In this document: positions 4,612-59,786 of the stretch, piece by piece
Layout of the letters: every line of letters begins with the position of its first letter
How positions within the stretch are numbered: position 1 is the stretch's first letter
Assembly (NCBI RefSeq): GCF_006345805.1
Contig: NW_021836300.1
Span: 3,718-67,717 of the forward strand
Source of the DNA: Octopus sinensis
Lineage: Eukaryota
Direction: 5' to 3'
Length of the DNA: 64,000 bases
The notes under the pieces: generated by a model
Told to the model about the DNA's origin: nothing
The model's input: the letters and a program-made list of their open reading frames with translations, nothing else
The model's database searches: none
Translations under genes and position numbers: made by a program

Positions 4612-4763
4612 CTTTGATATTCAGTTGATACCTTTCCAAAGGTGTGTCTGTGATGTCATCGTTCCGTCGACAGGTATATAAACCAACATCTTTGTAGTCC
4701 ACATCGTGGATGACCAATTCCCATCCTCGAATATCATGTCGGTTGTCTGGGAAGATGTCTTTG
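4612..4763 (-). CDS. Exon encoding C-terminal half of Ig-like (I-set type) domain
   Basis: [35 protein letters not shown] has the Ig L-x-I...D-x-G-x-Y-x-C motif. Acceptor ttcttcag in phase 2 matches the preceding exon; donor gtaagc in phase 1; 152 nt. Confidence 0.9.
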
Positions 4764-5282
4764 CTGAAGAACAGAGAGAGAGAGAGAAAGGAGGAGGGAT
4801 AGAACAAGGTATAAACCACATTTTAAGGTGCATAAGGAACCCCTTTTTTTGCCAAAAATTAGGTTAAAAGAATATACTCTTTACTCTTTTACTTGTTTCA
4901 GTCATTTGACTGCGGCCGTGCTGGAGCACCGCCTTTAATCGAGCAACTCGACCCCGGGACTTATTCTTTTGTAAGCCCAGTACTTATTCTATCGGTCTCC
5001 TTTGTCGAACCGCTAAGTAACGGGGACATAAACACACCAGCATCGGTTGTCAAGCAATGCTGGGGGAACAAACACACACAGACACACAAACATATATATA
5101 TATTATATACACATATATACGATGGGCTTCTTTCAGTTTCCGTCTACCAAATCCACTCACAAGGCTTTGGTTGGCCCGAGGCTATAGTAGAAGACACTTG
5201 CCCAAGGTGCCACGCAGTGGGACTGAACCCGGAACCATGTGGTTGATAAGCAAGCTACTTACCACACAGCTACTCCTGCCCC

Positions 5283-5322
<40 letters not shown>

Positions 5323-7718
5323 ATATATACATATATACGACGGGCTTCTTTCAGTTTCCATCTACCAAATCCACTCACAAGGCTTTGGTCAGCCCGAGGC
5401 TATAGTAGAAGACACTTGCCCAAGGTGCTACGCAGTGGAACTGAACCCGGAACCATGTGGTTGGGCAGCAAGCTACTTAGCACACAGCCACTCCTGCGCC
5501 TATGGGAGTTTCTTATACATGGATAGTATTATAATCCCTTAAATAAATAATAAATGTGCCTTTTTAAAGCCTAGCCAGGCTCATGGGCCCGGTTTCCCGG
5601 TTTCTATGGCGTATGTGTTCCCCAGATGGACGGGACGCCAGTCCATCGCAGCGTTACTCATTTTTGCCAGCTGAGTGAACTGGAGCAATGTGAAATGAAG
5701 TGTTTTGCTCAAGAACACAACACGTCGCCCGGTCCAGGAATCGAAACCACAATCTTACGATCATGATGCTGACACCCTAACCACTAAGCCATGCACCTCC
5801 ACTTTATAATCCTTTAGAAAACCGTTTTTCCAAAATTTTAACCTCACAAAATTGGTGGGGCTTCCATATACACGAGGGTTTTTTATACATGTTAAAATAC
5901 AGTAATTATTATTTTCGTTATGTACCTATGTGTATTTAGCAATTAAGTGGTTCGTTAAAAGGAGAGACAAGGCAAAAGAGGGGAGGGGGTAAAACGAAGT
6001 ACAATGCTATTCTGCTTATGTTACCTATCAATGTTATTTCTTTATTGCCCACAAGGGGCTAAACACAGAAGGGACAAACAAGGACAAAGGGATTAAGTTG
6101 ATTACATCGACCCCAGTGCGTAACTGGTACTTATTTAATCAATGGCACTGACAGCTGGAAGGGTGTCCACTACAAGTGTCCACCTTAAAAGTGACCACTC
6201 ACCCATTATGACTCCATGTGACAGAATATCCGACGGCTTCTCCGCACTGCAAGACCACCTTCTTCTTGAGATCGACTCCAAGCTTTATGATGTTGTTGGT
6301 CGGGGTCACAGTAAGGAACGGGGGCAGAGTGAAAACAGTCGGGGGCCGCATCTCGGGCCCGGATTTCACTCGGCAGGATGCCAAGCATTCCAGTTCAGTG
6401 TGGAACCGGTTGCCGTTGCCGCCGCAGCCAGAGTAGAAGAACTGGTCGCACTGTTCCTTGACGTGGTCATAGTACCACATTCGACGGATGTCCTGACACG
6501 AGCCCGTCGTTGCCGGCAACTTGCATTTCATTGGCTGTTTGACGGAGATTGCTGTAATTAATGGTAATGAGACAGATGTATAGATAATGGTAGTGGTGTT
6601 GGTGGCGACGGCAGTGGTGGTGGGGGCGATGATAGCGGTGGAGGCAGTGGTGATGGTGTGATAATAATGGTGGGGTGATGACTGTGGTGGAGGTGGTGAT
6701 GGTGGGGTGGTGGAGGCAATGGTAGTGGTGATGATGATGGTGGTGTGATAATAATGGTGGTGCTGGTGCAGTGATGATGGCGGTGGAGGTTCAATGATGG
6801 TGGTGGTGGTGATGTGATGGTGGTGGTTGGAGTTATGCAACAACAGCAGTGGTAATGGAGGTCAGTGCATTGGTGGTGGTGGTGGTGGTGGTGGTGGTGG
6901 TGGTGGTGGTGGTGGTGGTGGTGGTGGTGGTGGTGGTGGTGGTGGTGGTGGTGGTAGTGGTGGTGGTTGTTGCATTGTCAGAAGTGATATGATAGTCATC
7001 ACTGCATGCTCACAACAGTGGTGGTGGCCATCATAATGGTAGTGGGATAAGTCTGATGGAAGAATGAAGGCATAAAAACAAGCAAATGAAAAACGATTGA
7101 AAATGATTGAAAAATTTGAAAAAAGAATTAAAAATTTGAAAAATGAATAAAAAAAACTGAAAAAGGAATGAAAAATGATTGCAAAATGAATGAAAAACGA
7201 TTGAAAATGATTGAAAAATTGAAAAAAAAAAAAACTGAAAAATGAATGAAAACCTATTGAAAAATGAATGAAAAATTTGAAAAAAGAATTAAAAAAACTG
7301 AAAAATGAATGAAAACTTATTGAAAAATGAATGAAAAACGATTGAAAAATGAATGAAAAAACTGAAAACTGAATGAAAAACAATTGAAAATCTGCTGCAC
7401 ACTTACGTCCTGGGATTACTGGACCTGTATGGTTTCTTGGAGTTGTAGCATTTGGGCCACACAAATTATAACAAGCTCCCATGGTAGGGAAACGGTTGGC
7501 ATTACCACCACACCCTCCATACACAAACTTCCGGCATTTCTTCATGTTCGAGTCGTAGAAATAGGCAGTGCTGTATGCATAGCAGATTCCAGAATCTTCC
7601 GGAAGGCGGCAGATATCTGTAGAAAAGACCATTGTAAATTTTTTTTGTGTAAATTTGAACTACACACACACACACACATACACACAAGAAGATGGAAGAT
7701 GGAAAATAGCTGTAATAT

Positions 7719-7752
<34 letters not shown>

Positions 7753-10700
7753 AATTATTGTATACAGTGCTGAGGTGCACCACAACTTGTCAGAAAGTGC
7801 ATATAAAGCATATGCAGTAATGTACAAATGTCTGGGAAGTGAACAATGTATGAGTCAGATACATGCTGGTGTGTGTATGGAGGGGAGAAAATCAGGTGTA
7901 GTGTTGGCGAATCTCAGGAAGCATGGAAGTTTTGAAGGATGCAGTGCTCCGACAACTAACAACTAATGCCGGCAGTTTGTTCCATGCTTCAGCGTGTGTA
8001 TGGAGGGGAGAAAATCAGGTGTAGTGTTGGCGAATCTCAGGAAGCATGGAAGTTTTGAAGGATGCAGTGCTCCGACAATTAACAACTGATGCCGGCAGTT
8101 TGTTCCATGCTTCAGCAACTCTTAGCATGAAAAAATGTTTCCTCAAGTCATGGGAGCTGTGTTGTTTTCTGACTTTGTAAATATGTCCACAGGTGTTAGA
8201 TGGGTGGAGTTTGAAGAGATGCTCAGAGTTATTGTTTGTGTGATGGTTGATAATTTTATGGGTGTCTGCCAAGTCAGCTGCCAGACGTCGGAGTTTCAAT
8301 GTGTCCATGCCCCGGGAAGTAAGGCGTTCAGGATATGGCAAATGCCTGATGAAGGGTATTCTTTTGGTTGCGCTGTATCTGCTGTAAATTGTATAACTGT
8401 GCTAACCCCTGCACCAAAGTGACATTACAGCTTTAACCATCCATATAGGCGTAGGAGTGGCTGTGTGGTAAGTAGTGGGCGGCGAGCTGGCAGAATCGTT
8501 AGCATGCCGGATGAAATGTGTAGCCGTATTTCGTCTGCCGTTACGTTCTGAGTTCAAATTCCGCCAAGGTTGACTTTGCCTTACATCCTTTCGGGGTCGA
8601 TAAATTAAGTACCAGTTACGCACTGGGGTCGATGTAATCGACTTAATCCCTTTGTCTGTCCTTGTTTGTCCCCTCTGTGTTTAGCCCCTTGTGGGTAGTA
8701 AAGAAATATGTGTGGTAAGTAGCTTGCTTACCAACAACATGGTTCTGGGTTCAGTCCCACTGCGTGGCACCTTGGGCAAGTGTCTTCTACTATAGCCTCG
8801 GGCCGACCAAAGCCTTGTGCATGGATTTGGTAGATGGAAACTGAAAGAAGTCCGTCGTATATATGTATATATATATATATGTGTGTGCGTGTATGTTTGT
8901 GTGTCTGTGTTTGTTCCCCTAGCATTGCTTGACAACCGATGCTGGTGTGTTTATGTCCCCGTCACTTAGCGGTTCGGCAAAAGAGACCGATAGAATAAGT
9001 ATTGGGGTTACAAAAGAATACGTCCCGGGGCCGAGTTGCTCGATTAAAGGTGGTGCTCCAGCATGGCCGTAGTCAAATGACTGAAACAAGTAAAAGAGAA
9101 AAGAGAGAGAGAGATGTCAACTCACCCTTCTTGTTGCACGTGGCTTCACACTCGTGCTTCATCCTGAACCTGTTCTTGTTGCCTTCACAGCCTCCGTAGA
9201 GAAATTTCATGCATTGACCAACCGACATATCGTAATACCATGACGGAATTGCGCCCTTGCAGGAGCCAATCTTCTTGGCGAAATGGCACACATCTTTAGC
9301 GGATTCTCCTGAAATGAAATTCATGAAATCTATATATATAAAACTGTAGTTGTGTGAGTGTCTGTCCCCTTCGATTTAGATTCCTAACTACTCCCACATT
9401 TTGCGGTGCAGTTTAACCAAATTCGGGTATCTTATAGTCGTGATTCATATCGAGCCCGTCTGGCTATTAGCGCGCGTCTACGATGAGTCTACGACTTTAA
9501 AAATAATTTTACATAATTTTTTATTCCATTTTAATGCATAATTTTTCGTGTGTCGATGGCGGCGGAGTTGGCGTCCATGGTCACACCTGCACCTGTTTGC
9601 TTCTCCCCCTTCTTCCCTCCCTCGTGAAGCTGTGGGGAAGGGAGTGTAAGGAAATCAACGTCGTAAAGCGTTGTCAAGGAGACCAGCGTTCTTTTAGAAC
9701 AACGACATCATGGCTTGAAGACACCAAAACAGAAATGGCTAAGAAAGCCCGAATTGGCATCTATAAGGGAAGTAACTCTCTAAAAATGCTTATATAGTTA
9801 TTTCCTTTACAAACCTGAGCAACGCCGGGTGATACTGCTAGTAAAGTATAGAAGTGTAGCCAGCCGTGGAATGAGATGATCAATGCAGCTATTTGGATGC
9901 TGAAAACAGAGAATATATTGAAGCTTTCTACCCCTATAACTTCTGTTTAAAGTACCCAGGGACTAGGTGGTCTTGTTTAATCAGGGAATAGATTTTACCT
10001 CTCTACTCAAGCAGACTCTGCTAAAAGCACCCAGGAACTAGATGGCTTTGATAAAATAGGGAATATATTAAGGCTCCCTACCCTTGTAGCCTCTGTTCAA
10101 AGTACCCAGGAACTAGATGGCTTTGATAAAACAGGGAACAAATTAAGGCTCCTTACTCGTGTAGCCTCTGTTCAAAGCACCCAGGAACTAGATGGCTTTG
10201 ATAAAACAGGGAACAAATTAAGGCTCCTTACCCGTGTAGCTTCTGTTCAAAGTACCCAGGAACTAGATGGCTTTGATAAAACAGGGAACAAATTAAGGCT
10301 CCTTACCCGTGTAGCTTCTGTTCAAAGTACCCAGGAACTAGATGGCTTTGATAAAACAGGGAACAAATTAAGGCTCCTTACCCGTGTAGCTTCTGTTCAA
10401 AGTACCCAGGAACTAGATGGCTTTGATAAAACAGGGAACAAATTAAGGCTCCTTACCCGTGTAGCTTCTGTTCAAAGCACCCAGGAACTAGATGGCTTTG
10501 ATAAAACAGGGATTATATTAAGGCTCCCTAGTCTTGTAGCTTCTGTTCAAAGCACTCAGGGACTAGGTGGTCTTGTTAAACTAGGCCTCATATTAAGCCC
10601 ATTGATCTAGGGGACTTAGCTAAATCTATCCAAAGACCACAAAGTGCTGGAATGAAGCCGAGGATCAGGCTAAGTTCACCACAGAATATTTATGGAAGAT

Positions 10701-11175: not shown

Positions 11176-14100
11176 GACGGGCTTCTTTCAGTTTCCGTCC
11201 ACCAAATCCACTCACAAGGCTTTGGTCGGCCCGAGGCTATAGTAGAAGACATTTGCCCAAGGTGCCATGCAGTGGGACTGAACCCGGAACGATGTGGTTG
11301 GTAAGCAAGCTAGTTACCTCACAGCCACTCCTATATATATATATATATACGACGGGCTTCTTTTAGTTTCCGTCTACCAAATCCACTCACAAGGCTTTGG
11401 TCGGCCCGAGGCTATAGTAGAAGACACTTGCCCAAGGTGCCGCGCAGTGGGACTGAACCCGGAACCATGTGGTTGGTAAGCAAGCTACTTACCTCACAGC
11501 CACTCCTATATATATATATATAATACGACGGTCTTCTTTTAGTTTCCGTCCACCAAATCCACTCACAAGGCTTTGGTCGACCCGAGGCTATAGTAGAAGA
11601 CATTTGCCCAAGGTGCCACGCAGTAGGACTGAACCCGGAACTGTGTGGTTGGTAAGCAAGCTACTTACCACACAGCCACTCCTATATATATATATATATA
11701 CGACGGTCTTCTTTTAGTTTCCGTCTACCAAATCCACTAACAAGGCTTTAGTCAGCCCAAGGCTATAGTAGAAGACACTTGCCCAAGGTGCCGCGCAGTG
11801 GGACTGAACCCGGAACTGTGTGGTTGGTAAGCAAGCTACTTACCACACAGCCACTCCTGCGCTGTGTAAAGCACTTTTTGCTACATTTGGTGTTTATTTT
11901 CTAATTGTGCTACCAATCCACTTCCACTTTTTCTGAAATATTTGCTCCCTAATCGAAACTTGATTTGTTCTTTGCCATAGCTCCATATTGCTTATGTGTT
12001 GGGGCCATATAATTTTAAATATACTACGCAAGCATCTCTCTCTATATAAACGGCAGTTTGTCTGTCTGCGCGTCTGTGTGTCTGTTAGGTTGTACCCTCA
12101 CCCTGACCACGGCTTTCAACCGATTCTGATGAAACTTGACACACGCATAGCCCAATGTCATAATTCGAAACTAACGCAGCGAAAATTTTGAAAAGTTCCC
12201 CCAGTTCTGAAAAACAATCGATAAATTCGACATGCGGGTCGAGAATCAGAAACACAAACCACAGACTGTCTAGGGGACGCAACTCGACCTTTTTAACTCT
12301 CCAAAAAAAATTTACCATAATTTTTTTCCCCATTCTTTTGCTATTTTTTGGCTATAACTCTCTAAAAATGCTTTATAGTTATTTCCCTTACAAACCCGAG
12401 CAACGCTGGGCAATACTGCTAGTCTGTTGATAAATGATTGAAACAACAAAAGAACAAAGGTTGGAAATACGGAATGGGAAAATACCTGGGGCCTTGCAGG
12501 CTTTACGACATTCGTCTTCTGTTTCAAAGTTGTTGGCATTGCCACCACAGCCTGTGAATGCGAACCTTATGCATTTGTTGTCTTTCTTTGAGAAATGCCA
12601 GCGACGAGTGACATTGTGGCACCTGCCAGTATTTCGGGGGAGGTCACAGAGATCTAGTGAAAATAGAGGTCAGAGGTCAAAGTTCATGTACAGGTTTGTT
12701 GTTTGTTTGGTCCTTCTCGAGCCACACCTGGCTCATAAGGGCCGGTTTCCCGGTTTCTTTGGCATATAGGTTCCCCACCTGGACAGGACGTCGGTCCATC
12801 ACAGGTGAGCTGCAAGATGCAGGAGGAAAGAGCGAGAGAAAGTTGTGGCGAAAGAGTCAGCAGAAGTTTCGCCATTAACTTCTGCCAGATCCGCTTGGAG
12901 TTTAGGTGTTTTTGCTCATAAACACACACATCGCCCAGTCTGACATTCGAACCTGCGATCCATCAACCGCGAGTCCGCTGCTCTAACCACTGGGCCATGT
13001 GCTTCCACAATGTTCCTTCTCAAGCCACACCTGGCTCATAAGGGCCGGTTTCCTTGGCGTATAGGTTCCCCACCTGGACGGGACGCCGGTCCGTCGCAGG
13101 TGAGCTGCAAGACGCAGGAGGAAAGAGTGAGAGAAAGTTGTGGCGAAAGAGTCAGCGGAAGTTTGCCATTACCTTCTGCCAGATCCGTGTGGAGCTTAGG
13201 TGTTTCGCTCATAAACACACACATCGTCCGGTCTGAGATTCGAACCCACGATCCCTCCACTGCGAGTCTGCTGCTCTAACCACTAGGACATGTGCCTCCA
13301 CCATGTACAGGTGATTAGACTAGAGGTTAGAAGTCCCAGATCCTGGGTATGACTTTAAACTCCATCCAGTAGTGGGGCCCTAGTTCTGGAGTTATAGGGT
13401 TTTGATGAGTGCAGGACCACTTTTTAGTACCCGTTGGTCTCACATCTACTCTGGGCTGGGCCACGCATTGTGTTCTTGAGCAAAACTCTTCATTTCATAT
13501 CGCTCCAGTTCACTCAGCTTGGCAAAAATGAGAACTCCTGTGATGGACCAGCATCCGACCACTACCACCAACACCACCACCACTGTCACCGTCATCATCA
13601 TCGTCATCGTCATCGTCATCATCATCATCATCGTCATCATCATCATCATCACCGTCATCATCATCATCATCATTGTCATCGTCGTTGTCATTTAACATCC
13701 GCTTTCCATGCTGGCATGGGTTGGACAGTTCGACTGAGAACTGGCAAGCCGGGAGGCTGCATCAGGCCCCAATCTGATTTGGCAAGGTTTCTACAGCTGG
13801 ATGCCCTTCCTAACGCCAACCACTCTGAGCGAGTAGTGGGTGCTTTTAATCCTACAATGGACCAGCGTCCCATCCAGGTGGGGAATGTAAATGCCATGGA
13901 AACGAGGAAGGAACTTTACCTTACTATATCATCTCAGGAGTGGAGGCACGTGGCTTAGTGGTTAGAGCAACAACAACAACAAGAACAACAACAGCATCAT
14001 CATCATGAGCAGCAGCAGCAATAGCAATAAGAACAACAACAACAATAATCCTTTCTACTATAGGCACAAGGCCTCAAATTTCGGGGAAAGGGATTAGTCA

Positions 14101-21100: not shown

Positions 21101-21814
21101 CACAAGGCTAACTACAACAACAATTGCATCAGCAACAATTATATGCTGACCAACTTTTATCGTGACATACCTTTCGGCTGACATATCTTCTCACACTCCT
21201 CTTTAGATTCGTAACGGTTATTGTTGCCGCCACAGCCAGAGTAGAGGAACTTCTTGCAGCGACCTTCACCCATGTTGTAGTACCATTTATACATAATGTC
21301 TGTGCACGACCCGACCTCCTCTTTCAAGTGGCAATAACGAGCTGTGGAGAAAAACAATTAAAGACTATATATATATATATTGAACCATTGGGTCGGTCAT
21401 TAGTTAAGTGTATCTCTACGTGTATATATTTGAATCGAATTGCATATAACAATTTTAATTACAAAAAAAAAACTTTTGGCAACTACTGTATATATATTGA
21501 TAAAAATGGTAAGACAACAAAAGAATGAAAGATACTTCAATATATTGTAAATAGAGGAATTTATCCGTAAAAGTAATATGTGACAATTATTTGGTAGCCA
21601 TGATAAAACTCCGAGTTTCGGATGCCAAGGTGGAAATCCATGCCACCATCTCTTCAGTTATCTGGCCATCGGAAATAATGCTATGAAAATCTGCATAGAA
21701 TTTTAACCGATGGCCAGATAACTGAAGAGATGGTGGCATGGATTTCCACCTTGGCATCCGAAACTTGGAGTTTTATCATGGCTACCAAATAATTGTCACA
21801 TATTACTTTCACAG

Positions 21815-22064: not shown

Positions 22065-22589
22065 GTATACTCACACACACATACATATAAACATGCACAT
22101 CACAAGCTTTGTTCAGTTTATGTGAACCTAATTCACTGACAAGACATTTGCCTGGACTGAGGCTTACAGTAAAGAACACATGCGTCTAAGGTGCCATGCA
22201 GTGGGACTGAACTGGAAACCATTCGGTAGGGAAGCAAGCTTCTTAACCGTAGGGCCACACTTGCTCATATAAGAAAATCCAAAAGAACGCGTAGAGAACT
22301 TACTGGAAACGACACGCAGTTCCGTTGTTGTCATTGTAGTTGCTGGAGTGGTGAATGGAATATAGGGGGTGGTCCACTCGATCGATGACCCACACCTGAG
22401 ACGACATTCTTCGAAGGTCGCGAAACGGTTGGCATTGCCACCACATCCCCCATACACGAACATCTCACATTTACCCTTCAGTGTGTTGTGGAAATACTGC
22501 TCGATGTAGGCGTAGCAGTGTCCCTTTTTCTTGGGCAACAGGCAGACATCTGCATAAACAGGGGGTAACAGCTGTAGGTTAAGATTCTT

Positions 22590-51726: not shown

Positions 51727-54700
51727 ATTATATATATTTATATATATATATATATAATATATATATATAATATATATATATATTATATATATATATAATA
51801 TATATATACTATATATATATATATATATATATACATATATATATAAAGTGATCAAATAAGTACTAGGCTTAGAAAAATATAAGTCCCGGGGTTGATTTCT
51901 TTGACTAAAACTCTTTAAGACTGTGCTCCAGCGTGGCCGCATTCAAATGACTGAAACAAGAAAAGGAATAAAAGAATATGAAGAAAAGGTCTTACTTTTG
52001 GGGTCACAGAGGTAATTGCAGGCGTCTTTTGTTTTGAAAGAGTTGCGATTACTTAAGCAGTACCCTGGTGGTGCCTTTTGGCAAGTACCACTTGTCATGT
52101 TGTAGTACCATGATGGGCCGATGGCGTCACATATTACTGGGTTCTCAAGTAAAGAGCAAATATCCGTTGCTGAAATGGTAAGGAACACGGTTTGTTTTAG
52201 ATAAATGATAACACTAGTGTGTGTGTGTGTGTGTGCCTGTCTGTGTGTGTGTGTGTGTGTCTGTGTGTGTGTGTGTGTGCATGTCTGCGTGTGTGTGTGT
52301 CTGTGTGTGCGTGCGTGTGTGTGTCTGTGTGTGTGTGTGTGTGTGTCTGTGTGTGCGTGCATGTGTGTGTCTGTGTGTGTGTGTCTGTGTGTGTGTCTGT
52401 GTGCGTGTGTGTGTGTGTGTCTGTGTGTGTGTGTGTCTGTGTGTGTTTGTATTTATGTTGTTCCAGATATGACCATCGTTTCTGTTATTCAAGTTTACTC
52501 TGCCTTGGACAACATAAAGACCCCCTTCAGTCATCAGTGACCATGGTACGGCACCTAGAAAGCTCCCTCCGAGGCACAAGTCCAGGCAAGGTTGTTTATG
52601 GAAGACCAGATGTCACCCACGCATGCCAGCCTCCTCACTCCACGCCACCAATGTTATCCAAACGAAAGGTAAAGGCTGATACAGCTTGGCACCTGTGACA
52701 TCGCAACTCATTTCTACAGCTGAGCGAACTGGAGCGACGTGAAATGAAGTGTCTTGCTCAAGAACACAACACACAACCTGGTCTGGTAATACATACATAC
52801 ACACAGATACAGACACACACACATAAAGGGTACAAGGGTAAGGAGACCCTGTGGTGTCGGTGGAGAGGACGACAGATAGGGGAGGGCGGAAGTAGGGCTT
52901 GCAGGGCGCATGCGCGGCAGGAAGCGGAAGTGGTGAGGAACGACGCACGTGTGGCATCGACGAAGCGGGAGTTGCAGCTCACATGAAGAAGCGACGAGAC
53001 GCATTGACCTGGTTGAGCGAGATCTGATCTTCGCTGAGTTTTGGTAGACTAATCTTCGCCGAGGTAAGACCTAATTATATTTCCTTTCTCCTTTTCTGTT
53101 GCCCTCTTTCATCATTCACACCACAGACCCCTTTCTGTCGTGAAGGACTATGGGATTGCAGCTAAAAGGTTCCCCTCAGAGGTATGAGCCTGGGCAAGGT
53201 TGTTTATAGAATACCAGCAGTCACCCATGCATACCGTCCTCCTCTTCTCCATGCCACTGATGTTATCCAAGGGAAAGGCAAAGGGGCCAATACAGCTTGG
53301 CACCAGTGACGTCGCAACTCATTTCTACAGCTGAGTGAACTGGAGCAACATGAAATAAAGTGTCTTGCTCAAGAACATAACACACATCCTGGTCTGGTAA
53401 TACATACATACACACAGACACAGACACACACACAAATAAAGGGTAGAAGGGTAAGGACCCCTTTCTGTCATGAAGGACTATGGGATTGCAGCTAAAAAGT
53501 TCCCCTCAGAGGTATGAGCCTGGGCAAGGTTGTTTATAGAATACCAGCAGTCGCCCATGCATACCAGCCTCCTCTTCTCCACACCACTGATGTTATCCAA
53601 GGGAAAGGCAAAGGGGCCAATACAGCTTGGCACCAGTGACGTTGCAACTCATTTCTACAGCTGAGTGAACTGGAGCAACGTGAAATAAAGTGTCTTGCTC
53701 AAGAACATAACACACATCCTGGTCCAGGAATACATACATACATACATATATGTATATATATATATTCTGAGATCTCCTTCAGTCACAACACAGATCATGG
53801 GATTGCACCAAGAAAGTTACCCTCTCAGGCACAAGTCCAAGCAAGATTGTTTATGGAAGACCAGAGGTCATCCGTGCATACCGGCCTCCCCTCTCTGATG
53901 TTATCTAAGGGAAAGGCAAAGGGGCCGATACAGCTTGGCACCAGTGATGTCGCAACTCATTTCTACAGCTGAGTGAACTGGAGCAACATGAAATAAAATG
54001 TCTTGCTCAAGAACACAACATGCAGCCCAGTCCAGGAATCGAACTCACTACCTCATGATTATGAGCCTGACACTGGAACCACTAACCCATGCACCAACAA
54101 CAAAATAACAACAATATCAATAACAAGAACCAAAGAAATTGGTAAATAAAATCATCAGAAATCTTACGCTTCTCTTTCTTGGTCGGAACCGTGGGTTTAG
54201 CAAGGAATGGTTGGCATGCCTTCTGGCAGGTTTCCAAAGTAGCAAATCGGTTGGCGTTGCCTCCACATCCACCATAGGCGAATTCTTCACATTGTTTCGA
54301 TCCCATATTAAAGAACCACTGCTTGCTGTAGGCATAACATGTCCCTGAATCTTGCTTCAGTTGGCATATTCCTGTAGAATTACATAATAGTGACACGTTG
54401 TAGGGTGTGTGATTAAGGGTTGATGTAATCAACTAACTTTCTCATCCCAAGGGAGGCTCCTTAGAGTAACCCTTCCACTTGAGGAAGTGTCATTTGGGTA
54501 ACTCTTCCACCCAAGGGAGTGTTGTTAGGGAGTTGATATAACTGAATAAACTCTCTCATCCAAGGCAGTGTTATTAGGGTAAACCTTCAACCCAGAGGAT
54601 TGTTATTAGGGGTTGATATAATCAACTAACCCTCGCTCCCTGGAAAGGAATCCAGTTTCGGGTTTTGGGTTCATGGAAATGACTGTTCCTGAAACCCAAG

Positions 54701-58923: not shown

Positions 58924-59786
58924 ATACAATATGTTACATTACTCGGTGTCCAAGATAAAACTCTGAGTTTCAGATGCCGAAGTGGAAATCCACAACACCA
59001 TCTCTTCTTTAGCCAGATAACCGAAGAGATGGTGTTGTGGATTTCCACTTCGGCATCTGAAACTCAGTTTTATCTTGACTACCGAGTAATGTAACATATT
59101 GTATAGATAAATTTCCTCTATTTACATAATATTGAGGTCTCTCTTTCTTTCTTTTGTTATCTTACCGTTTATCAATATATATATATATATATATAATATA
59201 TATATATAAGTATTATTGGACGCTCAGGAAAGAGGAAAGAAAGAAGGTTTATGTTTTGAGCGGAGCTCTTCGTCGGAAACATAGGAGAAGGAAAGATCCA
59301 GAGAAGGGAAGACAGAGGAAAAAAATCGCCAGTGGTACACATGAGGTCATCCACATTTACGCAAAAAAAGGAAAAAACACTCCCTCACCAAGTTGCCTAA
59401 GTATAACAAAATAAAACTCAGTCAAGCAGGTTATGTTATGGGTTAACATGAATCGAGGGCCAAATGCATCAGGAGACAGGGGTAGCATGGATGGGTGAGT
59501 AGGGTGTTCAGAGAAAGATCAGAGTGGTAGGCGTGGGGTGGAGGGTCAGATTACATTCGGAAGTCCAATCAAACAGGGGAGCAAGGATATTTACGGTTGG
59601 GGTTACAGGTTCGGTTACACTCCTCCAGTGACATAAACCTATTTTCGTTTCCTGCACAGCCACTGTAGTTAAATGGCTGGCAGACAGCGTAGGGTGTGTC
59701 ATAGTACCAGACTTTCATGGTGTCGTTAAGGGCCAAGTCGTCCGGGCAGTCGGGGGAGCTGGGCTCCAGACTGCAGACTTCGATTT
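4612..59786 (-). CDS. Partial multi-exon gene: 14 tandem Kunitz/BPTI domains plus one Ig-like domain (papilin-like extracellular protein); 5' and 3' ends not found in window
   Basis: 15 exons read by eye with canonical AG/GT sites and compatible phases: 59595-59786, 54168-54371, 51996-52169, 44827-45021, 33982-34212, 29744-29962, 22304-22549, 21171-21341, 19021-19245, 16490-16744, 14946-15116, 9126-9308, 7407-7616, 6203-6551, 4612-4763. Total 3177 nt with no stop. A Kunitz array followed by Ig matches the C-terminal half of invertebrate papilins, but no TSP1, spacer or PLAC domain is in view, so no symbol is given. Confidence 0.9.
4876..5500 (-). mobile_element. tRNA-derived SINE family A (head GGCGCAGGAGTGGCTGTGTGGTAAG), one full and one partial tandem copy
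   Basis: Reverse complement of copies at 28476-28896, 36485-36889 and 43162-43590. B-box GGTTCAGTCCC, internal (TA)n and GTAAAAGA tail. Confidence 0.85.
6203..6551 (-). CDS. Exon K14: Kunitz domain (P1 Gln), linker and N-terminal half of Ig-like domain
   Basis: [52 protein letters not shown] followed by [18 protein letters not shown]. Acceptor aattacag, donor gtgagt, 349 nt, phase 1-2. Confidence 0.92.
6580..6968. repeat. (GGT)n microsatellite and degenerate GGT/GAT tract
   Basis: Pure TGG run at about 6870-6955 with a degenerate tract up to the K14 acceptor. Confidence 0.95.
7075..7390. repeat. A-rich GAATGAAAAA-type degenerate tandem repeat
   Basis: Repeated AAAAATGAATGAAAA / AAAAATGATTGAAAA blocks starting about 15 nt past the K13 donor. 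Confidence 0.85.
7407..7616 (-). CDS. Exon K13, Kunitz domain (P1 Tyr) plus linker
   Basis: [53 protein letters not shown]. Acceptor tttctacag, donor gtaagt, 210 nt, phase 1-1. Confidence 0.93.
7715..8415 (-). mobile_element. CR1-type LINE 3' fragment with (ATT)n tail and tandemly duplicated 3' segment
   Basis: ORF 8015-8341 [17 protein letters not shown]...[14 protein letters not shown] is a typical CR1 C-terminus. About 120 bp at 7868-7990 is duplicated at 7990-8110. Confidence 0.8.
8448..9100 (+). mobile_element. SINE family A interrupted by a SINE family B copy (8476-8708)
   Basis: 14-bp duplication TGTGTGGTAAGTAG at 8462-8475 and 8709-8722 flanks the inner element. Confidence 0.85.
9126..9308 (-). 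CDS. Exon K12, Kunitz domain (P1 Lys, trypsin-type)
   Basis: [53 protein letters not shown]. Acceptor ttcatttcag, donor gtgagt, 183 nt, phase 1-1. Confidence 0.93.
9329..9841 (+). mobile_element. Non-autonomous Helitron
   Basis: A|TC...CTAG|T with subterminal hairpin; paralog of 1910-2424. Confidence 0.85.
9930..10580. repeat. Minisatellite, 75-bp unit, about 8 copies
   Basis: AAAGTACCCAGGAACTAGATGGCTTTGATAAAACAGGGAACAAATTAAGGCTCCTTACCCGTGTAGCTTCTGTTC; period 75 (10251 to 10326). Confidence 0.95.
10905..11862 (-). mobile_element. SINE family A with its about 180-bp head segment repeated four times, joined by (TA)n
   Basis: One tail at about 10905 followed by four head copies, each ending in ACAGCCACTCCT(AT)n. 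Confidence 0.85.
12035..12422 (+). mobile_element. Non-autonomous Helitron, second subfamily
   Basis: A|TCTCTCTCTATATAAACGGCAG...CTAG|T with the same 3' hairpin. Paralog at 24545-24921. Confidence 0.85.
12690..13300 (-). mobile_element. Two tandem tRNA-derived SINEs (head resembling GGAGGCACATGGCCCAGTGGTTAGAGCAGC)
   Basis: Two about 300-bp related copies; further copy at about 27460-27728. Confidence 0.75.
14050..14850 (-). mobile_element. Tandem array of SINE family B segments
   Basis: Three to four repeats of CCCACAAGGGGCTAAACACAGAG...GGCAGACGAAATAC. Confidence 0.8.
14946..15116 (-). CDS. Exon K11, Kunitz domain (P1 Ser)
   Basis: [53 protein letters not shown]. Acceptor ctatttcag, donor gtaagt, 171 nt, phase 1-1. 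Confidence 0.93.
15548..15844 (+). mobile_element. Short non-autonomous Helitron
   Basis: A|TC...CTAG|T; internally deleted relative to 1910-2424. Confidence 0.8.
15888..16390 (+). mobile_element. 5'-truncated CR1 LINE with (TAAC)n tail
   Basis: ORF 15955-16305 [25 protein letters not shown]...[13 protein letters not shown]. Flanked by a 41-bp direct repeat at 15847-15887 and 16391-16431. Confidence 0.88.
16490..16744 (-). CDS. Exon K10, Kunitz domain (P1 Tyr) plus Pro/Thr linker
   Basis: [52 protein letters not shown]. Acceptor tctccatag, donor gtcagt, 255 nt, phase 1-1. Confidence 0.93.
16825..17320 (-). mobile_element. Abundant (GAT)n-tailed interspersed repeat (non-LTR/SINE-like) with internal about 60-bp repeats
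   Basis: Related copies at about 13690-13850, 23915-24465, 26690-27280, 35470-35860, 37360-37680 and 49065-49370, ending AAACGATGATGATG. Confidence 0.75.
17404..17640 (+). mobile_element. tRNA-derived SINE family C, 5' part
   Basis: Head GGAGGCGCAATGGCCCAGTGGTTAGGGCAGC. Reverse copies at 51205-51508 and 63545-63928. Confidence 0.75.
17870..18160. repeat. Long (TA)n microsatellite; similar tracts at 29330-29710, 51520-51845 and 58180-58925
   Basis: Direct reading. Confidence 0.95.
18220..18930. mobile_element. Inverted pair of SINE family B copies plus tandem partial copies
   Basis: 18221-18360 is the reverse complement of about 18508-18650, with about 150 bp between them. Confidence 0.8.
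19021..19245 (-). CDS. Exon K9, Kunitz domain (P1 Tyr) plus Thr-rich linker
   Basis: [53 protein letters not shown]. Acceptor tcttccag, donor gtgagt, 225 nt, phase 1-1. Confidence 0.93.
19387..19812. repeat. 66-bp minisatellite with internal inversion (about 2 units forward, about 4.5 units reverse)
   Basis: GAGGCTCAACCTTCC...GGGCCTAGTTT starts at 19515, 19581, 19647, 19713 and 19779; its reverse complement occupies 19387-19513. Confidence 0.92.
19875..21087 (-). mobile_element. LINE (RTE-like) 3' fragment whose about 234-bp ORF segment is tandemly amplified about 4.5 times
   Basis: Repeating peptide [33 protein letters not shown]; periods 234, 232, 229 and 234; (ATG)n tail at about 19878-19890. 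Confidence 0.8.
21171..21341 (-). CDS. Exon K8, Kunitz domain (P1 Thr)
   Basis: [53 protein letters not shown]. Acceptor tctccacag, donor gtatgt, 171 nt, phase 1-1. Confidence 0.93.
21570..21809. repeat. Fold-back hairpin element with 103-bp arms (1 mismatch seen) and 34-nt loop
   Basis: Arms 21570-21672 and 21707-21809. Related hairpins at 57156-57406 and 58921-59107. Confidence 0.9.
22304..22549 (-). CDS. Exon K7, Kunitz domain (P1 Tyr) plus Thr-rich linker
   Basis: [53 protein letters not shown]. Acceptor tttatgcag, donor gtaagt, 246 nt, phase 1-1. Confidence 0.93.
22583..23410. repeat. Complex CA/CATA/CT microsatellite with higher-order duplication
   Basis: Blocks such as CATTCATTTATACATCCATACATCCGTCCATACAAAC recur three times. 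Confidence 0.85.
24545..24921 (+). mobile_element. Non-autonomous Helitron, second subfamily
   Basis: A|TC...CTAG|T; paralog of 12035-12422. Confidence 0.85.
25331..25575. repeat. AT-rich imperfect fold-back element embedded in (TA)n
   Basis: TATAAATTAGAGATAAAACCAC...AAATAAATTAATTAA is mirrored by TTAATTAATTTATTT...GTGGTTTTATCTCTAATTTATA. Confidence 0.7.
28065..28325. repeat. Degenerate about 20-25-bp minisatellite built on AAAATTTTCGAAAAATTTT
   Basis: About 12 degenerate units. Confidence 0.85.
28476..28896 (+). mobile_element. Full-length SINE family A; others at 36485-36889, 38976-39375 (5'-truncated) and 43162-43590
   Basis: tRNA-like head, internal (TA)n/(TG)n and GTAAAAGA tail. Confidence 0.85.
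29744..29962 (-). CDS. Exon K6, Kunitz domain (P1 Leu) plus Pro/Thr linker
   Basis: Manual translation [53 protein letters not shown] (the ORF track starts mid-domain). Acceptor ccattccag, donor gtcagt, 219 nt, phase 1-1. Confidence 0.93.
29965..31300. repeat. GAATG-rich minisatellite, about 190-bp unit, about 7 copies, abutting the K6 acceptor
   Basis: AGCAGATTAGTGGATTGGCA recurs at about 29994, 30184, 30370, 30560, 30750, 30940 and 31129. Confidence 0.93.
31700..32185. repeat. 158-bp GAATG-rich tandem repeat, 3 copies; a fourth at about 33805-33960
   Basis: AGAATGCTGAAAATA at 31713, 31871 and 32029. Confidence 0.88.
32331..33798 (-). mobile_element. Full-length mariner DNA transposon (Tc1/mariner), decayed
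   Basis: Perfect 30-bp TIRs TTGGGTTGTCCGGAAAGTTTGTGCCGATTT, TA on both sides (32329-32330 and 33799-33800), 1468 bp including a 184-bp internal duplication. Confidence 0.96.
32588..33616 (-). pseudogene. Mariner transposase pseudogene
   Basis: Fragments 33431-33616 ([21 protein letters not shown]), 33119-33352 (WVPHEL, TGDEKW) and 32588-32917 ([20 protein letters not shown]), separated by stops or frameshifts. Confidence 0.93.
33982..34212 (-). CDS. Exon K5, Kunitz domain (P1 Tyr) plus Thr/Ser linker
   Basis: [53 protein letters not shown]. Acceptor ccattccag, donor gttagt, 231 nt, phase 1-1. Confidence 0.93.
34215..34810. repeat. Degenerate GGAATGGTAGAAT-rich tandem repeats abutting the K5 acceptor
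   Basis: Direct reading; same motif class as upstream of K6 and K9. Confidence 0.8.
35968..36303 (+). mobile_element. tRNA-derived SINE family D (core TGTGTTCTTGAGCAAGACAC)
   Basis: Head GGCGCGTGGCTCAGTGGTTAGAGCG. Reverse copies at about 45990-46328 and 52500-54085; related head at about 5670-5800. Confidence 0.78.
39590..40650 (-). mobile_element. Cluster and tandem array of SINE family B
   Basis: Three near-identical about 185-bp segments at 40060-40650 plus a copy at 39600-39740. Confidence 0.8.
41070..41850. repeat. About 119-bp minisatellite with two short inverted segments
   Basis: Unit ...CAGAACAGGACGATACACGTGGATGGAAGAGTCACTGAAGAAGGCACAGATGTGTGATG...; reverse-complement pieces at about 41074-41110 and 41311-41348. 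Confidence 0.85.
42690..43130 (-). mobile_element. Probable Tx1/L1-type LINE 3' fragment with partial tandem duplication
   Basis: Minus-strand translation [36 protein letters not shown] resembles recalled Tx1-type C-termini. 42701-42822 duplicates part of 42865-42995. Confidence 0.45.
44150..44765. repeat. Complex (GA)n/(GATA)n microsatellite downstream of the K4 donor; (AAC)n/(TAC)n tracts at 43875-44105
   Basis: Direct reading. Confidence 0.93.
44827..45021 (-). CDS. Exon K4, Kunitz domain (P1 Tyr) plus linker
   Basis: [52 protein letters not shown]. Acceptor gtcaccag, donor gtaagg, 195 nt, phase 1-1. Confidence 0.93.
47047..48061 (-). mobile_element. Composite Helitron with two 5' ends sharing one 3' end
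   Basis: 5' TC termini at 48061 and 47546; a single, slightly mutated 3' hairpin end near 47047-47075; internal about 100-bp repeats. Confidence 0.7.
49468..49619. repeat. Fold-back hairpin (about 73-bp arms)
   Basis: GTGTACATTTAAACACATTAAGG...AAAGTCCAAACCA mirrored around 49540-49547. A single-arm relative lies at about 45805-45990. Confidence 0.88.
49850..50900 (+). mobile_element. Penelope-like element GIY-YIG endonuclease 3' fragment, split by an RTE insertion
   Basis: [46 protein letters not shown], resuming after about 50640 as [13 protein letters not shown]. Confidence 0.7.
50065..50640 (-). mobile_element. RTE LINE 3' fragment with tandemly duplicated C-terminal segment
   Basis: Minus-strand translation [16 protein letters not shown]...[23 protein letters not shown] (RTE C-terminal Cys/His motif); 3' end GGATGCCAACAAC; about 230-bp duplication. 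Confidence 0.75.
50984..51117. repeat. Fold-back hairpin with 58-bp perfect arms; relative at 57585-57709
   Basis: Arms 50984-51041 and 51060-51117, just downstream of the Penelope-like fragment and next to (TA)n. Confidence 0.9.
51996..52169 (-). CDS. Exon K3, divergent Kunitz domain
   Basis: [53 protein letters not shown]: six Cys at canonical 8-15-7-12-3 spacing. Acceptor ccatttcag, donor gtaaga, 174 nt, phase 1-1. Confidence 0.85.
52500..54085 (-). mobile_element. Tandemly duplicated SINE family D units (about 330-bp period)
   Basis: Four copies of GCAACTCATTTCTACAGCTGAG...GTCTTGCTCAAGAAC; a CA-rich spacer is shared by the first copies. Confidence 0.8.
52850..53125 (+). mobile_element. 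Candidate solo LTR (or small TIR element), 276 bp
   Basis: Termini TGTGGTGT...ACACCACA (8-bp inverted repeat, TG...CA), 5-bp TSD GACCC at 52845-52849 and 53126-53130. Empty site in the neighbouring duplicate at about 53451-53470. Confidence 0.75.
54168..54371 (-). CDS. Exon K2, Kunitz domain (P1 Tyr) plus linker
   Basis: [52 protein letters not shown]. Acceptor ttctacag, donor gtaaga, 204 nt, phase 1-1. Confidence 0.93.
54727..55680. repeat. 48-bp minisatellite, about 20 copies
   Basis: ACAAAAGACAAATATATATTGGGATATTAAGATGGTGTTTGGGACATC with variant units containing ACCACAACAGACAGATAAAC. Confidence 0.95.
59595..59786 (-). CDS. Exon K1, atypical Kunitz domain with 6-residue loop insertion
   Basis: [59 protein letters not shown]. 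Acceptor tttctttcag, donor gtaaat, 192 nt, phase 1-1. Confidence 0.9.

What the first reader, a model, noticed from the sequence alone, without database searches (positions are those of the whole stretch)
4612..59786. Array of 14 Kunitz domains, 13 of them single in-frame-skippable exons: a possible combinatorial protease-inhibitor system
Seen: K1-K13 each lie in their own phase 1-1 exon (171-255 nt, all multiples of 3). Every exon ends in A, C or G, so no skipping junction can create a stop codon, and any subset (theoretical ceiling 2^13) stays in frame with K14 and Ig. Known: symmetric phase 1-1 exons are typical of shuffled extracellular modules, and invertebrate papilins (Drosophila papilin, C. 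elegans MIG-6) carry about a dozen Kunitz domains and have isoforms differing in this region. Inference: this papilin-like gene, with at least 14 domains of different predicted specificity, could produce tissue-specific inhibitor combinations by exon skipping.
Basis: partly seen in the sequence, partly recalled or inferred. Interest (0 to 1): 0.8.

Follow-up and report, generated by a model that had tools for sequence, protein, structure and literature searches.

The report
Octopus papilin Kunitz-domain exon array
This is the already-annotated middle part of the octopus papilin gene, an extracellular-matrix protein with 15 protease-inhibitor (Kunitz) modules here, each in an exon that could be skipped in frame, but nothing available shows that octopuses actually mix and match them.

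Summary
The array is real but undercounted. The minus strand carries 15 Kunitz units, not 14. Fourteen sit in single phase 1-1 exons of 168-255 nt. The fifteenth shares an exon with the first half of an Ig domain. My exon model, built from the sequence alone, is 100% identical over 1,092 residues to RefSeq XP_036356152.1 ("papilin, partial", Octopus sinensis), so the gene and all its exons are already annotated.

The features offered as signs of a combinatorial system are generic. Phase 1-1 is the usual structure of Kunitz module exons. A non-T last exon base is what the splice-donor consensus gives anyway.

No octopus model shows skipping. The single O. sinensis model includes every exon. Two O. 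vulgaris models built with Iso-Seq support include Kh to Ko without gaps. O. bimaculoides models lack five units, but they are locally unreliable and I could not obtain the DNA.

RefSeq does model whole-Kunitz skipping in horseshoe-crab, tick and bryozoan relatives, so the idea is plausible but not new. Unit number varies at the genome level: Kf is missing from the O. vulgaris assembly. Bivalve papilins have 14-16 units.

Verdict: an ordinary, already annotated papilin array. Combinatorial splicing is untested.

The parts
59595..59786 (-). Exon Ka (192 nt, phase 1-1): atypical Kunitz unit with a 21-residue C2-C3 loop, P1 = Pro. First exon of the gene on this scaffold.
   Evidence: Only its C-terminal two-thirds aligns to solved Kunitz domains. 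Residues from MKVWYYD onward are in XP_036356152.1. No orthologue in the O. bimaculoides models (best 41%).
54168..54371 (-). Exon Kb (204 nt, phase 1-1): Kunitz unit of the Y-A-Y class, P1 = Tyr, with a Lys/Pro/Thr linker.
   Evidence: 100% match to P0121; 95.5% to the O. bimaculoides orthologue.
51996..52169 (-). Exon Kc (174 nt, phase 1-1): degenerate Kunitz unit ([13 protein letters not shown] in place of FxYGGCGGNxNRF), P1 = Asp, six Cys kept.
   Evidence: Full-length alignment to SmCI, TFPI and boophilin. 91% conserved in O. bimaculoides.
44827..45021 (-). Exon Kd (195 nt, phase 1-1): Kunitz unit, Y-A-Y class, P1 = Tyr.
33982..34212 (-). Exon Ke (231 nt, phase 1-1): Kunitz unit, Y-A-Y class, P1 = Tyr, Thr/Ser/Pro-rich linker. 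Recent paralogue of Kf and Ki (73-76% identity).
   Evidence: Homology with Ki extends 50 nt into the upstream intron. Donor is GTTAGT.
29744..29962 (-). Exon Kf (219 nt, phase 1-1): Kunitz unit, P1 = Leu, Thr/Pro-rich linker. Absent at the syntenic site of the O. vulgaris assembly.
   Evidence: Orthologue in O. bimaculoides at 91.7%. Missing from L001. Its acceptor lies 6 nt from a 190-bp satellite.
22304..22549 (-). Exon Kg (246 nt, phase 1-1): Kunitz unit, P1 = Tyr, Thr-rich linker.
   Evidence: The O. vulgaris models start inside this exon because they are 5'-truncated.
21171..21341 (-). Exon Kh (171 nt, phase 1-1): Kunitz unit of the W-Y-Y class, P1 = Thr. Not in the O. bimaculoides models.
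   Evidence: Present in O. vulgaris DNA at 99.4% and in both O. vulgaris models.
19021..19245 (-). Exon Ki (225 nt, phase 1-1): Kunitz unit, P1 = Tyr, Thr-rich linker.
16490..16744 (-). Exon Kj (255 nt, phase 1-1): Kunitz unit, P1 = Tyr, long Pro/Thr/Lys linker. Not in the O. bimaculoides models.
   Evidence: In O. vulgaris DNA at 98.4% and in its models.
14946..15116 (-). Exon Kk (171 nt, phase 1-1): Kunitz unit, P1 = Ser.
12486..12653 (-). Exon Kl (168 nt, phase 1-1): Kunitz unit, P1 = His (Leu in O. bimaculoides).
9126..9308 (-). Exon Km (183 nt, phase 1-1): Kunitz unit, P1 = Lys, the only trypsin-type P1 in the window.
7407..7616 (-). Exon Kn (210 nt, phase 1-1): Kunitz unit, P1 = Tyr. Not in the O. 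bimaculoides models.
6203..6551 (-). Exon Ko+Ig1 (349 nt, phase 1 to 2): last Kunitz unit (P1 = Gln) plus the first half of an I-set Ig domain.
   Evidence: The Ig part matches contactin- and axonin-type Ig domains.
4612..4763 (-). Exon Ig2 (152 nt, phase 2 to 1): second half of the Ig domain. The gene continues beyond window position 1.
   Evidence: The next Ig exon is not in the window but is at L001:39451-39792 in O. vulgaris.

Best explanation
The window holds the central Kunitz array and first Ig domain of the octopus papilin orthologue. Papilin is a secreted, ADAMTS-like extracellular-matrix glycoprotein.

The array grew by tandem duplication of single Kunitz exons together with flanking intron. 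Such duplication stays in frame only because the ancestral Kunitz exon is symmetric (phase 1-1). So symmetric phases and in-frame skippability are by-products of how the array arose, not evidence of a splicing programme.

By default all units are spliced into one mRNA. The product would be a beads-on-a-string protein: Kunitz units separated by Thr/Ser/Pro-rich, probably O-glycosylated, linkers. It presents many inhibitor-type loops in the matrix or mucus. Eight units have Tyr or Leu at P1 (chymotrypsin/elastase-type), one has Lys (trypsin-type), and six have non-canonical P1 residues.

Diversity in unit number is shown at the genome level, through in-frame exon gain and loss between species, rather than at the splicing level.

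Shown: exon structure, identity with the annotated papilin, Kunitz and Ig family membership, paralogy pattern, and presence or absence of exons in O. vulgaris DNA.

Inferred: constitutive inclusion, glycosylated linkers, inhibitory specificities, and matrix or mucus location.
For: - Exon model and phases.
- 100% identity over 1,092 aa to RefSeq 'papilin, partial' of O. sinensis, a single model that contains every exon.
- Two O. vulgaris models include Kh-Ko and the Ig exons contiguously. That annotation used Iso-Seq, RNA-seq and PASA alternative-splicing updates.
- All exons from Kg to Ig2 are conserved in O. vulgaris DNA at 97-99.6%, against roughly 89-97% for the introns.
- All 15 units keep six Cys. 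Eleven exons, ten of them Kunitz units, are 85-96% identical to O. bimaculoides orthologues.
- Pfam PF00014 and Ig families are recorded on the cluster. Units match solved Kunitz and I-set structures.
- Duplication history: the Y-A-Y class units are 51-76% identical to one another, and Ke/Kf/Ki homology runs about 50 nt into the upstream intron.
- Papilin context: an ADAMTS spacer is recorded on the O. bimaculoides models and a faint TSP1 hit on the newer one. YGCCPDG repeats are visible in the sequence.
- Genome-level modularity: Kf is ancestral (91.7% orthologue in O. bimaculoides) but absent at the syntenic site in O. vulgaris.
- Cephalopod papilin is reported in epidermal cells and in skin mucus (PMC9839350, PMC11431876).
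Against: - No transcript reads were available, so constitutive inclusion rests on three automated gene models from two very close species.
- The O. vulgaris models are 5'-truncated and say nothing about Ka-Kf.
- Both O. bimaculoides models omit Ka, Kh, Kj, Kn and Ko/Ig1. Their junction codons, N at Kg|Ki and K at Ki|Kk, are exactly what precise exon joining predicts, and this could reflect real skipping.
- Several donors are weak or atypical: Ka, Kb and Kl score low, and Ke, Kf and Kj have a pyrimidine at +3. Weak sites are commoner in cassette exons.
- RefSeq models whole-unit skipping in related multi-Kunitz genes.
- The Kf absence in O. vulgaris could be an assembly collapse inside intronic satellites.
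Confidence: 0.7

Rival explanations
1. Limited cassette splicing. A few of the Kunitz exons are alternatively included, giving a handful of papilin isoforms as in Drosophila. Candidates are Ka, Kh, Kj, Kn and Ko, which are missing from the O. bimaculoides models, and the weak-donor exons. The rest of the array is constitutive.
For: - All 14 single-unit exons are symmetric and skip junctions are stop-free.
- The O. bimaculoides models join Kg to Ki and Ki to Kk with the junction codons expected from precise skipping.
- The missing units are at most 69% identical to any paralogue, while orthologues are 85-96% identical. They therefore predate the species split and were not simply never present.
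- Donor strengths are heterogeneous.
- RefSeq isoforms of Tachypleus, three ticks and a bryozoan each lack exactly one or two whole Kunitz units.
- Alternative splicing is published for Drosophila papilin (Kramerova 2003, cited) and C. elegans mig-6.
- An in-frame 342-nt Ig exon downstream is included in the O. sinensis model but omitted from both O. vulgaris models.
Against: - No O. sinensis or O. vulgaris model skips a Kunitz exon.
- The O. bimaculoides models are unreliable here. They cut an Ig domain in half, insert a 13-residue filler with no counterpart in this window, and the newer one is fused to a neighbouring chitin-binding gene.
- That genome is an early short-read assembly, to my knowledge, so the exons may lie in gaps.
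- Mollusc isoform pairs sampled from RefSeq differ only by small indels.
- The Tachypleus deletions fall at a regular three-unit period, so read mis-mapping between near-identical repeats may have created some of those models.
Confidence: 0.24
2. One reading: a true combinatorial system. Many independent exon-skipping choices generate a large, tissue-specific repertoire of inhibitor combinations, up to 2^14.
For: Only permissive evidence exists. Every subset stays in frame and P1 residues are varied. The many single- and double-unit deletion isoforms modelled in Tachypleus hint that such behaviour may occur somewhere.
Against: - The supporting features are generic to Kunitz exons and to splice donors.
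- There are no transcript variants in octopus models.
- I saw no feature such as mutually exclusive exon clusters.
- In the C. elegans neuronal-maintenance assay, the Kunitz-containing C-terminal region of MIG-6S was dispensable (PMC11844652).
Confidence: 0.04
3. The exons belong to separate transcription units, or some are unexpressed pseudo-exons. The long array would then be an annotation artefact.
For: The O. vulgaris annotation has no protein covering Ka-Kf, and its models begin inside Kg.
Against: - The O. vulgaris models start at internal Met residues in the middle of a Kunitz domain, which is typical of 5'-truncated transcripts.
- All 15 units keep open frames, six Cys and canonical splice sites.
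- O. bimaculoides models join the N-terminal cassette through Kb-Km to Ig2 in one transcript.
- No signal peptide or start exon is evident between units.
Confidence: 0.02

Closest known systems
Papilin (Drosophila Ppn; C. elegans MIG-6; Manduca lacunin), an ADAMTS-like basement-membrane glycoprotein
   Same: Same family by annotation and architecture. The orthologue has a TSP1/ADAMTS-spacer cassette and Cys-rich YGCCPDG repeats upstream, then a Kunitz array, then Ig domains and a PLAC-like C-terminus. Alternative splicing of papilin is published for fly and worm.
   Different: There are more Kunitz units: 15 in this window, plus 8 further upstream in the O. bimaculoides model. If those 8 are conserved, the total is about 23, against about 10-12 in insects and nematodes. 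Linkers are Thr/Pro-rich. Worm isoforms differ by a long versus short C-terminus, not by individual unit skipping. I could not read the Drosophila isoform paper.
Tick papilin (Rhipicephalus microplus BAC HM748961)
   Same: A 40-exon gene with TSP1, ADAMTS spacer, ten Kunitz units, Ig and PLAC. The authors already suggested that undiscovered isoforms may exist (PMC3160391).
   Different: It has a WAP domain between the Kunitz and Ig parts, and fewer Kunitz units.
Multi-Kunitz 'papilin-like' genes with RefSeq exon-skipping isoforms (Tachypleus tridentatus LOC143234563, Amblyomma, Haemaphysalis and R. microplus papilin, Watersipora)
   Same: Long Kunitz arrays of 11-26 units. Their modelled isoforms differ by deletion of exactly one or two whole units at many positions.
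   Different: These are automated models in other phyla, some on highly periodic arrays where mis-mapping is possible. No such isoforms exist for the octopus gene or for the mollusc pairs sampled.
APP KPI exon and TFPI Kunitz exons (vertebrates)
   Same: Each is a single Kunitz domain in its own symmetric exon. The APP KPI exon 7 is a classic cassette exon (abstracts; established knowledge).
   Different: They involve one to three units, not a long array, and the proteins are unrelated.
SmCI, tri-Kunitz inhibitor of Sabellastarte magnifica (PDB 4bd9_B)
   Same: Closest solved relative of the individual units, with E = 8e-36 for Ke. It is a tandem Kunitz protein from a marine lophotrochozoan.
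   Different: It is a small three-domain inhibitor, not an ECM protein. Its dual serine-protease and carboxypeptidase inhibition cannot be inferred for the octopus units.

Membership tests
Kunitz/BPTI domain (Pfam PF00014) | Six Cys with spacing C-8-C-15-C-7-C-12-C-3-C | tested here: met
   14 of 15 units are canonical. Ka has 21 residues in place of 15 between C2 and C3. The signature occurs 15 times versus 0 in 100 shuffles.
Kunitz/BPTI domain (Pfam PF00014) | Significant sequence similarity to known or solved Kunitz domains | tested here: met
   Ke has E = 8e-36 and Kc 1.6e-15, both aligned over their full length. Ka has 2.6e-16 but only over residues 23-61. PF00014 is precomputed on the protein cluster.
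Kunitz/BPTI domain (Pfam PF00014) | Canonical inhibitory loop with a protease-type P1 residue, and actual inhibition | not testable with these tools
   P1 residues read from the sequence are P, Y, D, Y, Y, L, Y, T, Y, Y, S, H, K, Y, Q. Activity needs biochemistry.
Papilin | N-terminal papilin cassette (TSP1, ADAMTS Cys-rich/spacer, further TSP1 repeats) | tested here: inconclusive
   It is not in the window, because the scaffold starts at Ka. It is present in the O. bimaculoides orthologue: PF05986 is listed for P0002 and is weak, with faint PF19030, on P0123. CSRTCGGG and the spacer are visible in the sequence. The link rests on an automated model.
Papilin | Cys-rich lagrin-type repeats between the cassette and the Kunitz region | tested here: inconclusive
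   Repeated YGCCPDG/YGCCDD motifs are visible in P0123 and P0125. The domain name is taken from PMC11844652. No profile test was run.
Papilin | Tandem Kunitz array | tested here: met
   15 units in colinear exons.
Papilin | C-terminal Ig (I-set/C2) domains | tested here: met
   The Ig domain is split over 6203-6551 and 4612-4763 and matches contactin and axonin Ig domains. PF07679, PF13927 and PF13895 are recorded on P0003. Further Ig exons lie downstream in O. vulgaris.
Papilin | C-terminal PLAC domain | tested here: inconclusive
   The O. vulgaris C-terminus (CLNVQDVLPTLQCRIIVTSQLCDQRAFRTQCCASCKK) has a PLAC-like six-Cys pattern, but no PF08686 hit is recorded for it. It lies outside the window.
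Papilin | Orthology or annotation as papilin | tested here: met
   100% identical over 1,092 aa to XP_036356152.1 'papilin, partial [Octopus sinensis]'. 99% identical to O. vulgaris 'papilin' models.
Cassette-exon or combinatorial alternative-splicing system | Exons symmetric, so that skipping preserves the frame without creating stops | tested here: met
   14 exons are phase 1-1 with lengths divisible by 3, and no stop arises at any pairwise junction. This feature is necessary but generic.
Cassette-exon or combinatorial alternative-splicing system | Transcripts or models of the same species that differ in which exons they include | tested here: not met
   There is one O. sinensis model with all exons. 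Two O. vulgaris models are identical across Kh-Ig2. No other octopus protein fragments are in the database. Reads themselves could not be examined.
Cassette-exon or combinatorial alternative-splicing system | Tissue-specific regulation of inclusion | not testable with these tools
   This needs RNA-seq or Iso-Seq mapping.

The most novel reading that the evidence does not exclude
Octopus papilin really does use its symmetric Kunitz exons as independent cassettes. Ka, Kh, Kj, Kn and Ko, which are omitted from the O. bimaculoides models, would be the first candidates. Epidermis, mucus-secreting cells and other tissues would then secrete matrix proteins with different sets of inhibitor loops. This would be a splicing-encoded protease-inhibitor repertoire, layered on rapid genomic gain and loss of units between octopus species.
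Probability: 0.1. Interest if true: 0.6.

Novelty: already known. Interest (0 to 1): 0.25.

Why it matters
As it stands, the finding re-derives an existing RefSeq gene model and confirms that the scan can recover exon structure from raw sequence.

Three modest points of interest remain:
- Octopus papilin probably has the largest Kunitz array among the molluscs sampled: about 23 units if the eight upstream units of O. bimaculoides are conserved.
- Unit number seems to change between very close species by in-frame exon loss inside satellite-rich introns. Kf is missing in O. vulgaris.
- The function of papilin's Kunitz region is unknown in any animal, and cephalopod papilin marks a conspicuous epidermal cell population.

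If cassette use of the units were shown, it would give a concrete handle on what the Kunitz region is for. The public Iso-Seq data make that test cheap.

Tried and rejected
1. I looked for transcript-derived octopus fragments that would reveal junction usage. The full-length query returned only heterologous multi-Kunitz proteins plus two octopus clusters. I then masked the family-wide conserved residues so that only close relatives could score. That returned the same two clusters and one distant Logan contig. That contig, P0098, is only 36-38% identical and not informative.

2. I tried to get O. bimaculoides genomic DNA to see whether Ka, Kh, Kj, Kn and Ko exist there. The gene range is 151 kb, so no DNA was returned.

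3. I considered that the five units missing in O. bimaculoides are O. sinensis-specific gains. I rejected this because each is at most 69% identical to any paralogue, whereas orthologues are 85-96% identical.

4. I considered 'isoform X2/X12' in the O. vulgaris names as evidence for at least 12 isoforms. I rejected this because the names come from Blast2GO best hits. The two proteins differ only in which internal Met starts a 5'-truncated ORF.

5. I searched the introns for extra or decayed Kunitz exons and found none.

6. I looked for other genes, RNA families or tRNAs in the introns. There were no Rfam hits, one dubious tRNA-like hit, and long ORFs only inside tandem repeats.

I treat this as a weak hint only.

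8. Kawano 2009 (PMC2674254) is not held in the library, and Kramerova 2003 was not read. My statements on the fly isoforms rest on citations in other papers.
Full report
**Observation.** A six-frame scan for the Kunitz cysteine pattern found 14 canonical matches, all on the minus strand. The only other matches were translations of (TG)n microsatellites. An ORF listing of the upstream region showed a fifteenth unit at 59.6-59.8 kb, with a 21-residue loop between C2 and C3. The strict six-Cys signature occurs 15 times in the window and never in 100 shuffles.

**Exon structure.** For each unit I extended the open frame and listed AG and GT sites by phase. In every case one polypyrimidine-AG acceptor leaves two bases before the frame, and one GT donor leaves one base after it. 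That is phase 1-1. The fourteen single-unit exons are:

| Exon | Coordinates | Length (nt) |
|---|---|---|
| Ka | 59595-59786 | 192 |
| Kb | 54168-54371 | 204 |
| Kc | 51996-52169 | 174 |
| Kd | 44827-45021 | 195 |
| Ke | 33982-34212 | 231 |
| Kf | 29744-29962 | 219 |
| Kg | 22304-22549 | 246 |
| Kh | 21171-21341 | 171 |
| Ki | 19021-19245 | 225 |
| Kj | 16490-16744 | 255 |
| Kk | 14946-15116 | 171 |
| Kl | 12486-12653 | 168 |
| Km | 9126-9308 | 183 |
| Kn | 7407-7616 | 210 |

The fifteenth unit, Ko, shares a 349-nt exon (6203-6551, phase 1 to 2) with the first half of an Ig domain. That Ig domain is finished by 4612-4763 (152 nt, phase 2 to 1). The stated range of 171-255 nt fits if the 168-nt exon Kl was the one missed. 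No exon ends in T, and no pairwise skip junction makes a stop.

**Identity.** A protein search with the concatenated translation returned 'papilin isoform X2 [Octopus vulgaris]' at 99% and 'papilin-like [Octopus bimaculoides]' at 63% over the best local alignment. Hundreds of heterologous multi-Kunitz and papilin proteins followed. The cluster members include XP_036356152.1, 'papilin, partial [Octopus sinensis]', 1203 aa, on a 67.7-kb scaffold. My model is identical to it over all 1,092 residues that overlap. So the window is O. sinensis, my exon boundaries are corroborated, and the array is already annotated, with every exon included in the single RefSeq model. The model's last Ig exon lies outside the window.

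**Is it really papilin?** The window holds only Kunitz and Ig modules. The O. bimaculoides models carry, upstream of the orthologues of Kb-Km, a TSP1 motif, an ADAMTS spacer (Pfam PF05986), eight more Kunitz units and runs of YGCCPDG Cys-rich repeats. The O. vulgaris models continue downstream into further Ig domains and a PLAC-like six-Cys C-terminus. This is the papilin architecture as described for worm and tick. Individual units match solved Kunitz inhibitors. The best hit is the tri-Kunitz SmCI, then TFPI and boophilin. Ke and the degenerate Kc align over their full length, while Ka aligns only over its C-terminal two-thirds. The Ig part matches I-set domains.

**Anatomy of the array.** Two classes of unit are visible.
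- The 'C-Y-A-Y ... [13 protein letters not shown]' class comprises Kb, Kd, Ke, Kf, Kg, Ki, Kj and Kn. These units are 51-76% identical to one another, have P1 = Tyr (Leu in Kf), and are mostly followed by Thr/Ser/Pro-rich linkers.
- The 'W-Y-Y' class comprises Ka, Kc, Kh, Kk, Kl, Km and Ko. These are 27-51% identical, with P1 = Pro, Asp, Thr, Ser, His, Lys and Gln.

So the units are not all of different predicted specificity. Half share an aromatic P1, and only Km has a trypsin-type Lys. Ke, Kf and Ki are recent paralogues, and homology of both Ke and Kf with Ki extends about 50 nt into the upstream intron. Their acceptors abut GGAATGG-type intronic satellites. This is the footprint of tandem duplication of exon plus flank. 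Such duplication stays in frame only if the exon is symmetric.

This is established knowledge: class 1-1 modules, the APP KPI exon, the TFPI exons. The lack of a terminal T is expected from the donor consensus, where position -1 is mostly G and rarely T. Here 8 of the 14 single-unit exons end in G. With a T frequency of 7-8%, the chance of no T in 14 exons is about 0.3. That figure is my estimate from general knowledge, not a tool result. Both features allow skipping, but neither argues for it.

**Evidence on actual exon use.**
1. O. sinensis has one RefSeq model, with all exons.
2. O. vulgaris has two models that start at internal Met residues inside Kg, so they are 5'-truncated. Both contain Kh, Ki, Kj, Kk, Kl, Km, Kn, Ko, Ig1 and Ig2 in order. 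That annotation used Iso-Seq, RNA-seq and PASA alternative-splicing updates. The 'X2/X12' labels are Blast2GO names, not an isoform count.
3. The older and newer O. bimaculoides models both lack Ka, Kh, Kj, Kn and Ko/Ig1. Their junction residues, N at Kg|Ki and K at Ki|Kk, are what A+AT and A+AG would give on precise joining. Each missing unit is at most 69% identical to any paralogue, while orthologues are 85-96% identical. The units are therefore older than the species split, and the cause must be loss, assembly gaps or skipping. These models are unreliable here. They leave half an Ig domain and bridge it with a 13-residue filler that has no counterpart in this window. The newer one runs on into a chitin-binding neighbour. 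The DNA could not be fetched because the gene spans 151 kb.
4. A search with the conserved Kunitz residues masked found no other octopus proteins or transcript fragments. Junction usage therefore could not be tested with the data on hand.

**Comparative evidence.** Isoform sets of related genes in RefSeq show the proposed behaviour.
- Tachypleus tridentatus LOC143234563 has 26 units. Of its listed isoforms, 12 differ from the longest only by deletion of one or two whole units, at different positions, and a thirteenth lacks one unit plus two short N-terminal segments.
- Rhipicephalus microplus, Haemaphysalis longicornis and Amblyomma americanum genes, and a bryozoan gene, also have isoforms that lack whole units.
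- The Tachypleus deletions fall on a three-unit period, so mis-mapping among near-identical repeats may contribute.
- The three mollusc isoform pairs sampled (Littorina, Gigantopelta, Babylonia) differ only by small indels.

Alternative splicing of papilin is published for Drosophila and C. elegans. The tick papilin paper already raised the possibility of undiscovered isoforms. The concept is therefore not new.

**Unit counts.** Mollusc papilin-like proteins in the hit list carry 8-16 units: Mactra and Potamilus 16, Argopecten 15, Ylistrum 14. The incomplete O. bimaculoides model has 18. Chelicerate relatives have 14-26. If the eight upstream units are conserved, O. sinensis papilin would have about 23. 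That is high for a mollusc but not a distinct kind of gene.

**Genome-level variation.** In the O. vulgaris locus (L001), all exons from Kg to Ig2 are present at 97-99.6% nucleotide identity. Kf is not. The match to the window runs at 100% through the last 49 nt of the intron upstream of Kf. It is then replaced by copies of a 158-bp intronic repeat, and it resumes downstream of the microsatellite that follows Kf. Kf has a 91.7% orthologue in O. bimaculoides, so it is ancestral. Either O. vulgaris has lost it in frame (Ke|Kg would read GAT, Asp) or the assembly collapsed there. This suggests that modularity is exploited in evolution, whatever happens in splicing.

**Conclusion.** The best-supported reading is a constitutively spliced papilin Kunitz array built by tandem exon duplication (confidence 0.7). 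Its symmetric exons make both evolutionary gain or loss and occasional skipping possible. Limited cassette use of a few units is a live rival (0.24). A large combinatorial system is unsupported (0.04). The decisive test is to map the named public Iso-Seq and RNA-seq sets onto these exons.

Noticed in passing
window 29744-29962 versus L001:577-1195: Exon Kf is absent from the syntenic position of the O. vulgaris chromosome assembly. The upstream intron matches at 100% up to the exon, then a 158-bp intronic repeat takes its place. Kf is ancestral (91.7% orthologue in O. bimaculoides), so this is an in-frame exon loss or an assembly collapse.
   Followed up: partly
outside the window (below position 1); L001:39451-39792: A symmetric 342-nt Ig exon (VPVTINEDQ...) follows Ig2 in the O. 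sinensis RefSeq model. It is present in O. vulgaris DNA at 97% but is omitted from both O. vulgaris models, which splice Ig2 directly to the next Ig exon. It is a candidate cassette exon or an annotation difference.
   Followed up: partly
window 2568-4605: A 132-bp satellite (about 15 copies, 92% matches) begins 7 nt after the donor of exon Ig2 and fills most of that intron as far as the window reaches. Its translation gives long spurious ORFs.
   Followed up: no
window 29969-31300, 31705-32184, 34297-34733: GGAATGG-rich intronic satellites (190-, 158- and 64-72-bp units) end within a few bases of the acceptors of Kf and Ke. The branch-point and polypyrimidine regions of these exons are therefore satellite sequence. 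The copy number of the 190-bp array differs between O. sinensis (7) and O. vulgaris (about 2).
   Followed up: partly
window 59863-63214: A 3.3-kb (TGAATGAA)n-like low-complexity array with extreme GC and AT skew lies immediately upstream of exon Ka. A 128-bp higher-order repeat sits inside it.
   Followed up: no
window 54734-55680: A 48-bp tandem array (about 20 copies, 93% matches) in the Ka-Kb intron is open in both strands for 321 codons. These are repeat artefacts, not genes.
   Followed up: no
window 213-581, 14250-14801, 40061-40612 (184-185 bp units); 5093-5503, 11155-11858 (175-218 bp units): Dispersed SINE-like elements occur as tandem dimers to tetramers in several introns. At the site homologous to 14250-14801, O. 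vulgaris carries about nine to ten copies instead of three (L001:19421-21249).
   Followed up: no
window 36881-36975 (+): ARAGORN reports a 95-nt tRNA-Phe-like sequence with anticodon AAA in the large Kd-Ke intron. There is no Rfam support, so it is probably repeat-derived or spurious.
   Followed up: no
P0123 (O. bimaculoides XP_052834080.1), residues about 1890-2248: The newer O. bimaculoides papilin model runs on into chitin-binding type-2 (CBM_14) domains of a neighbouring 'chondroitin proteoglycan 2-like' gene. It spans 151 kb with two other genes nested on the opposite strand, so it is probably a chimeric model.
   Followed up: no
window 6552-6861 (-): The open frame upstream of exon Ko reads through a His/Thr/Pro-rich low-complexity stretch (a GGTGGTGGA-type 90-bp repeat on the plus strand). 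It is intronic according to the RefSeq model, not coding.
   Followed up: no
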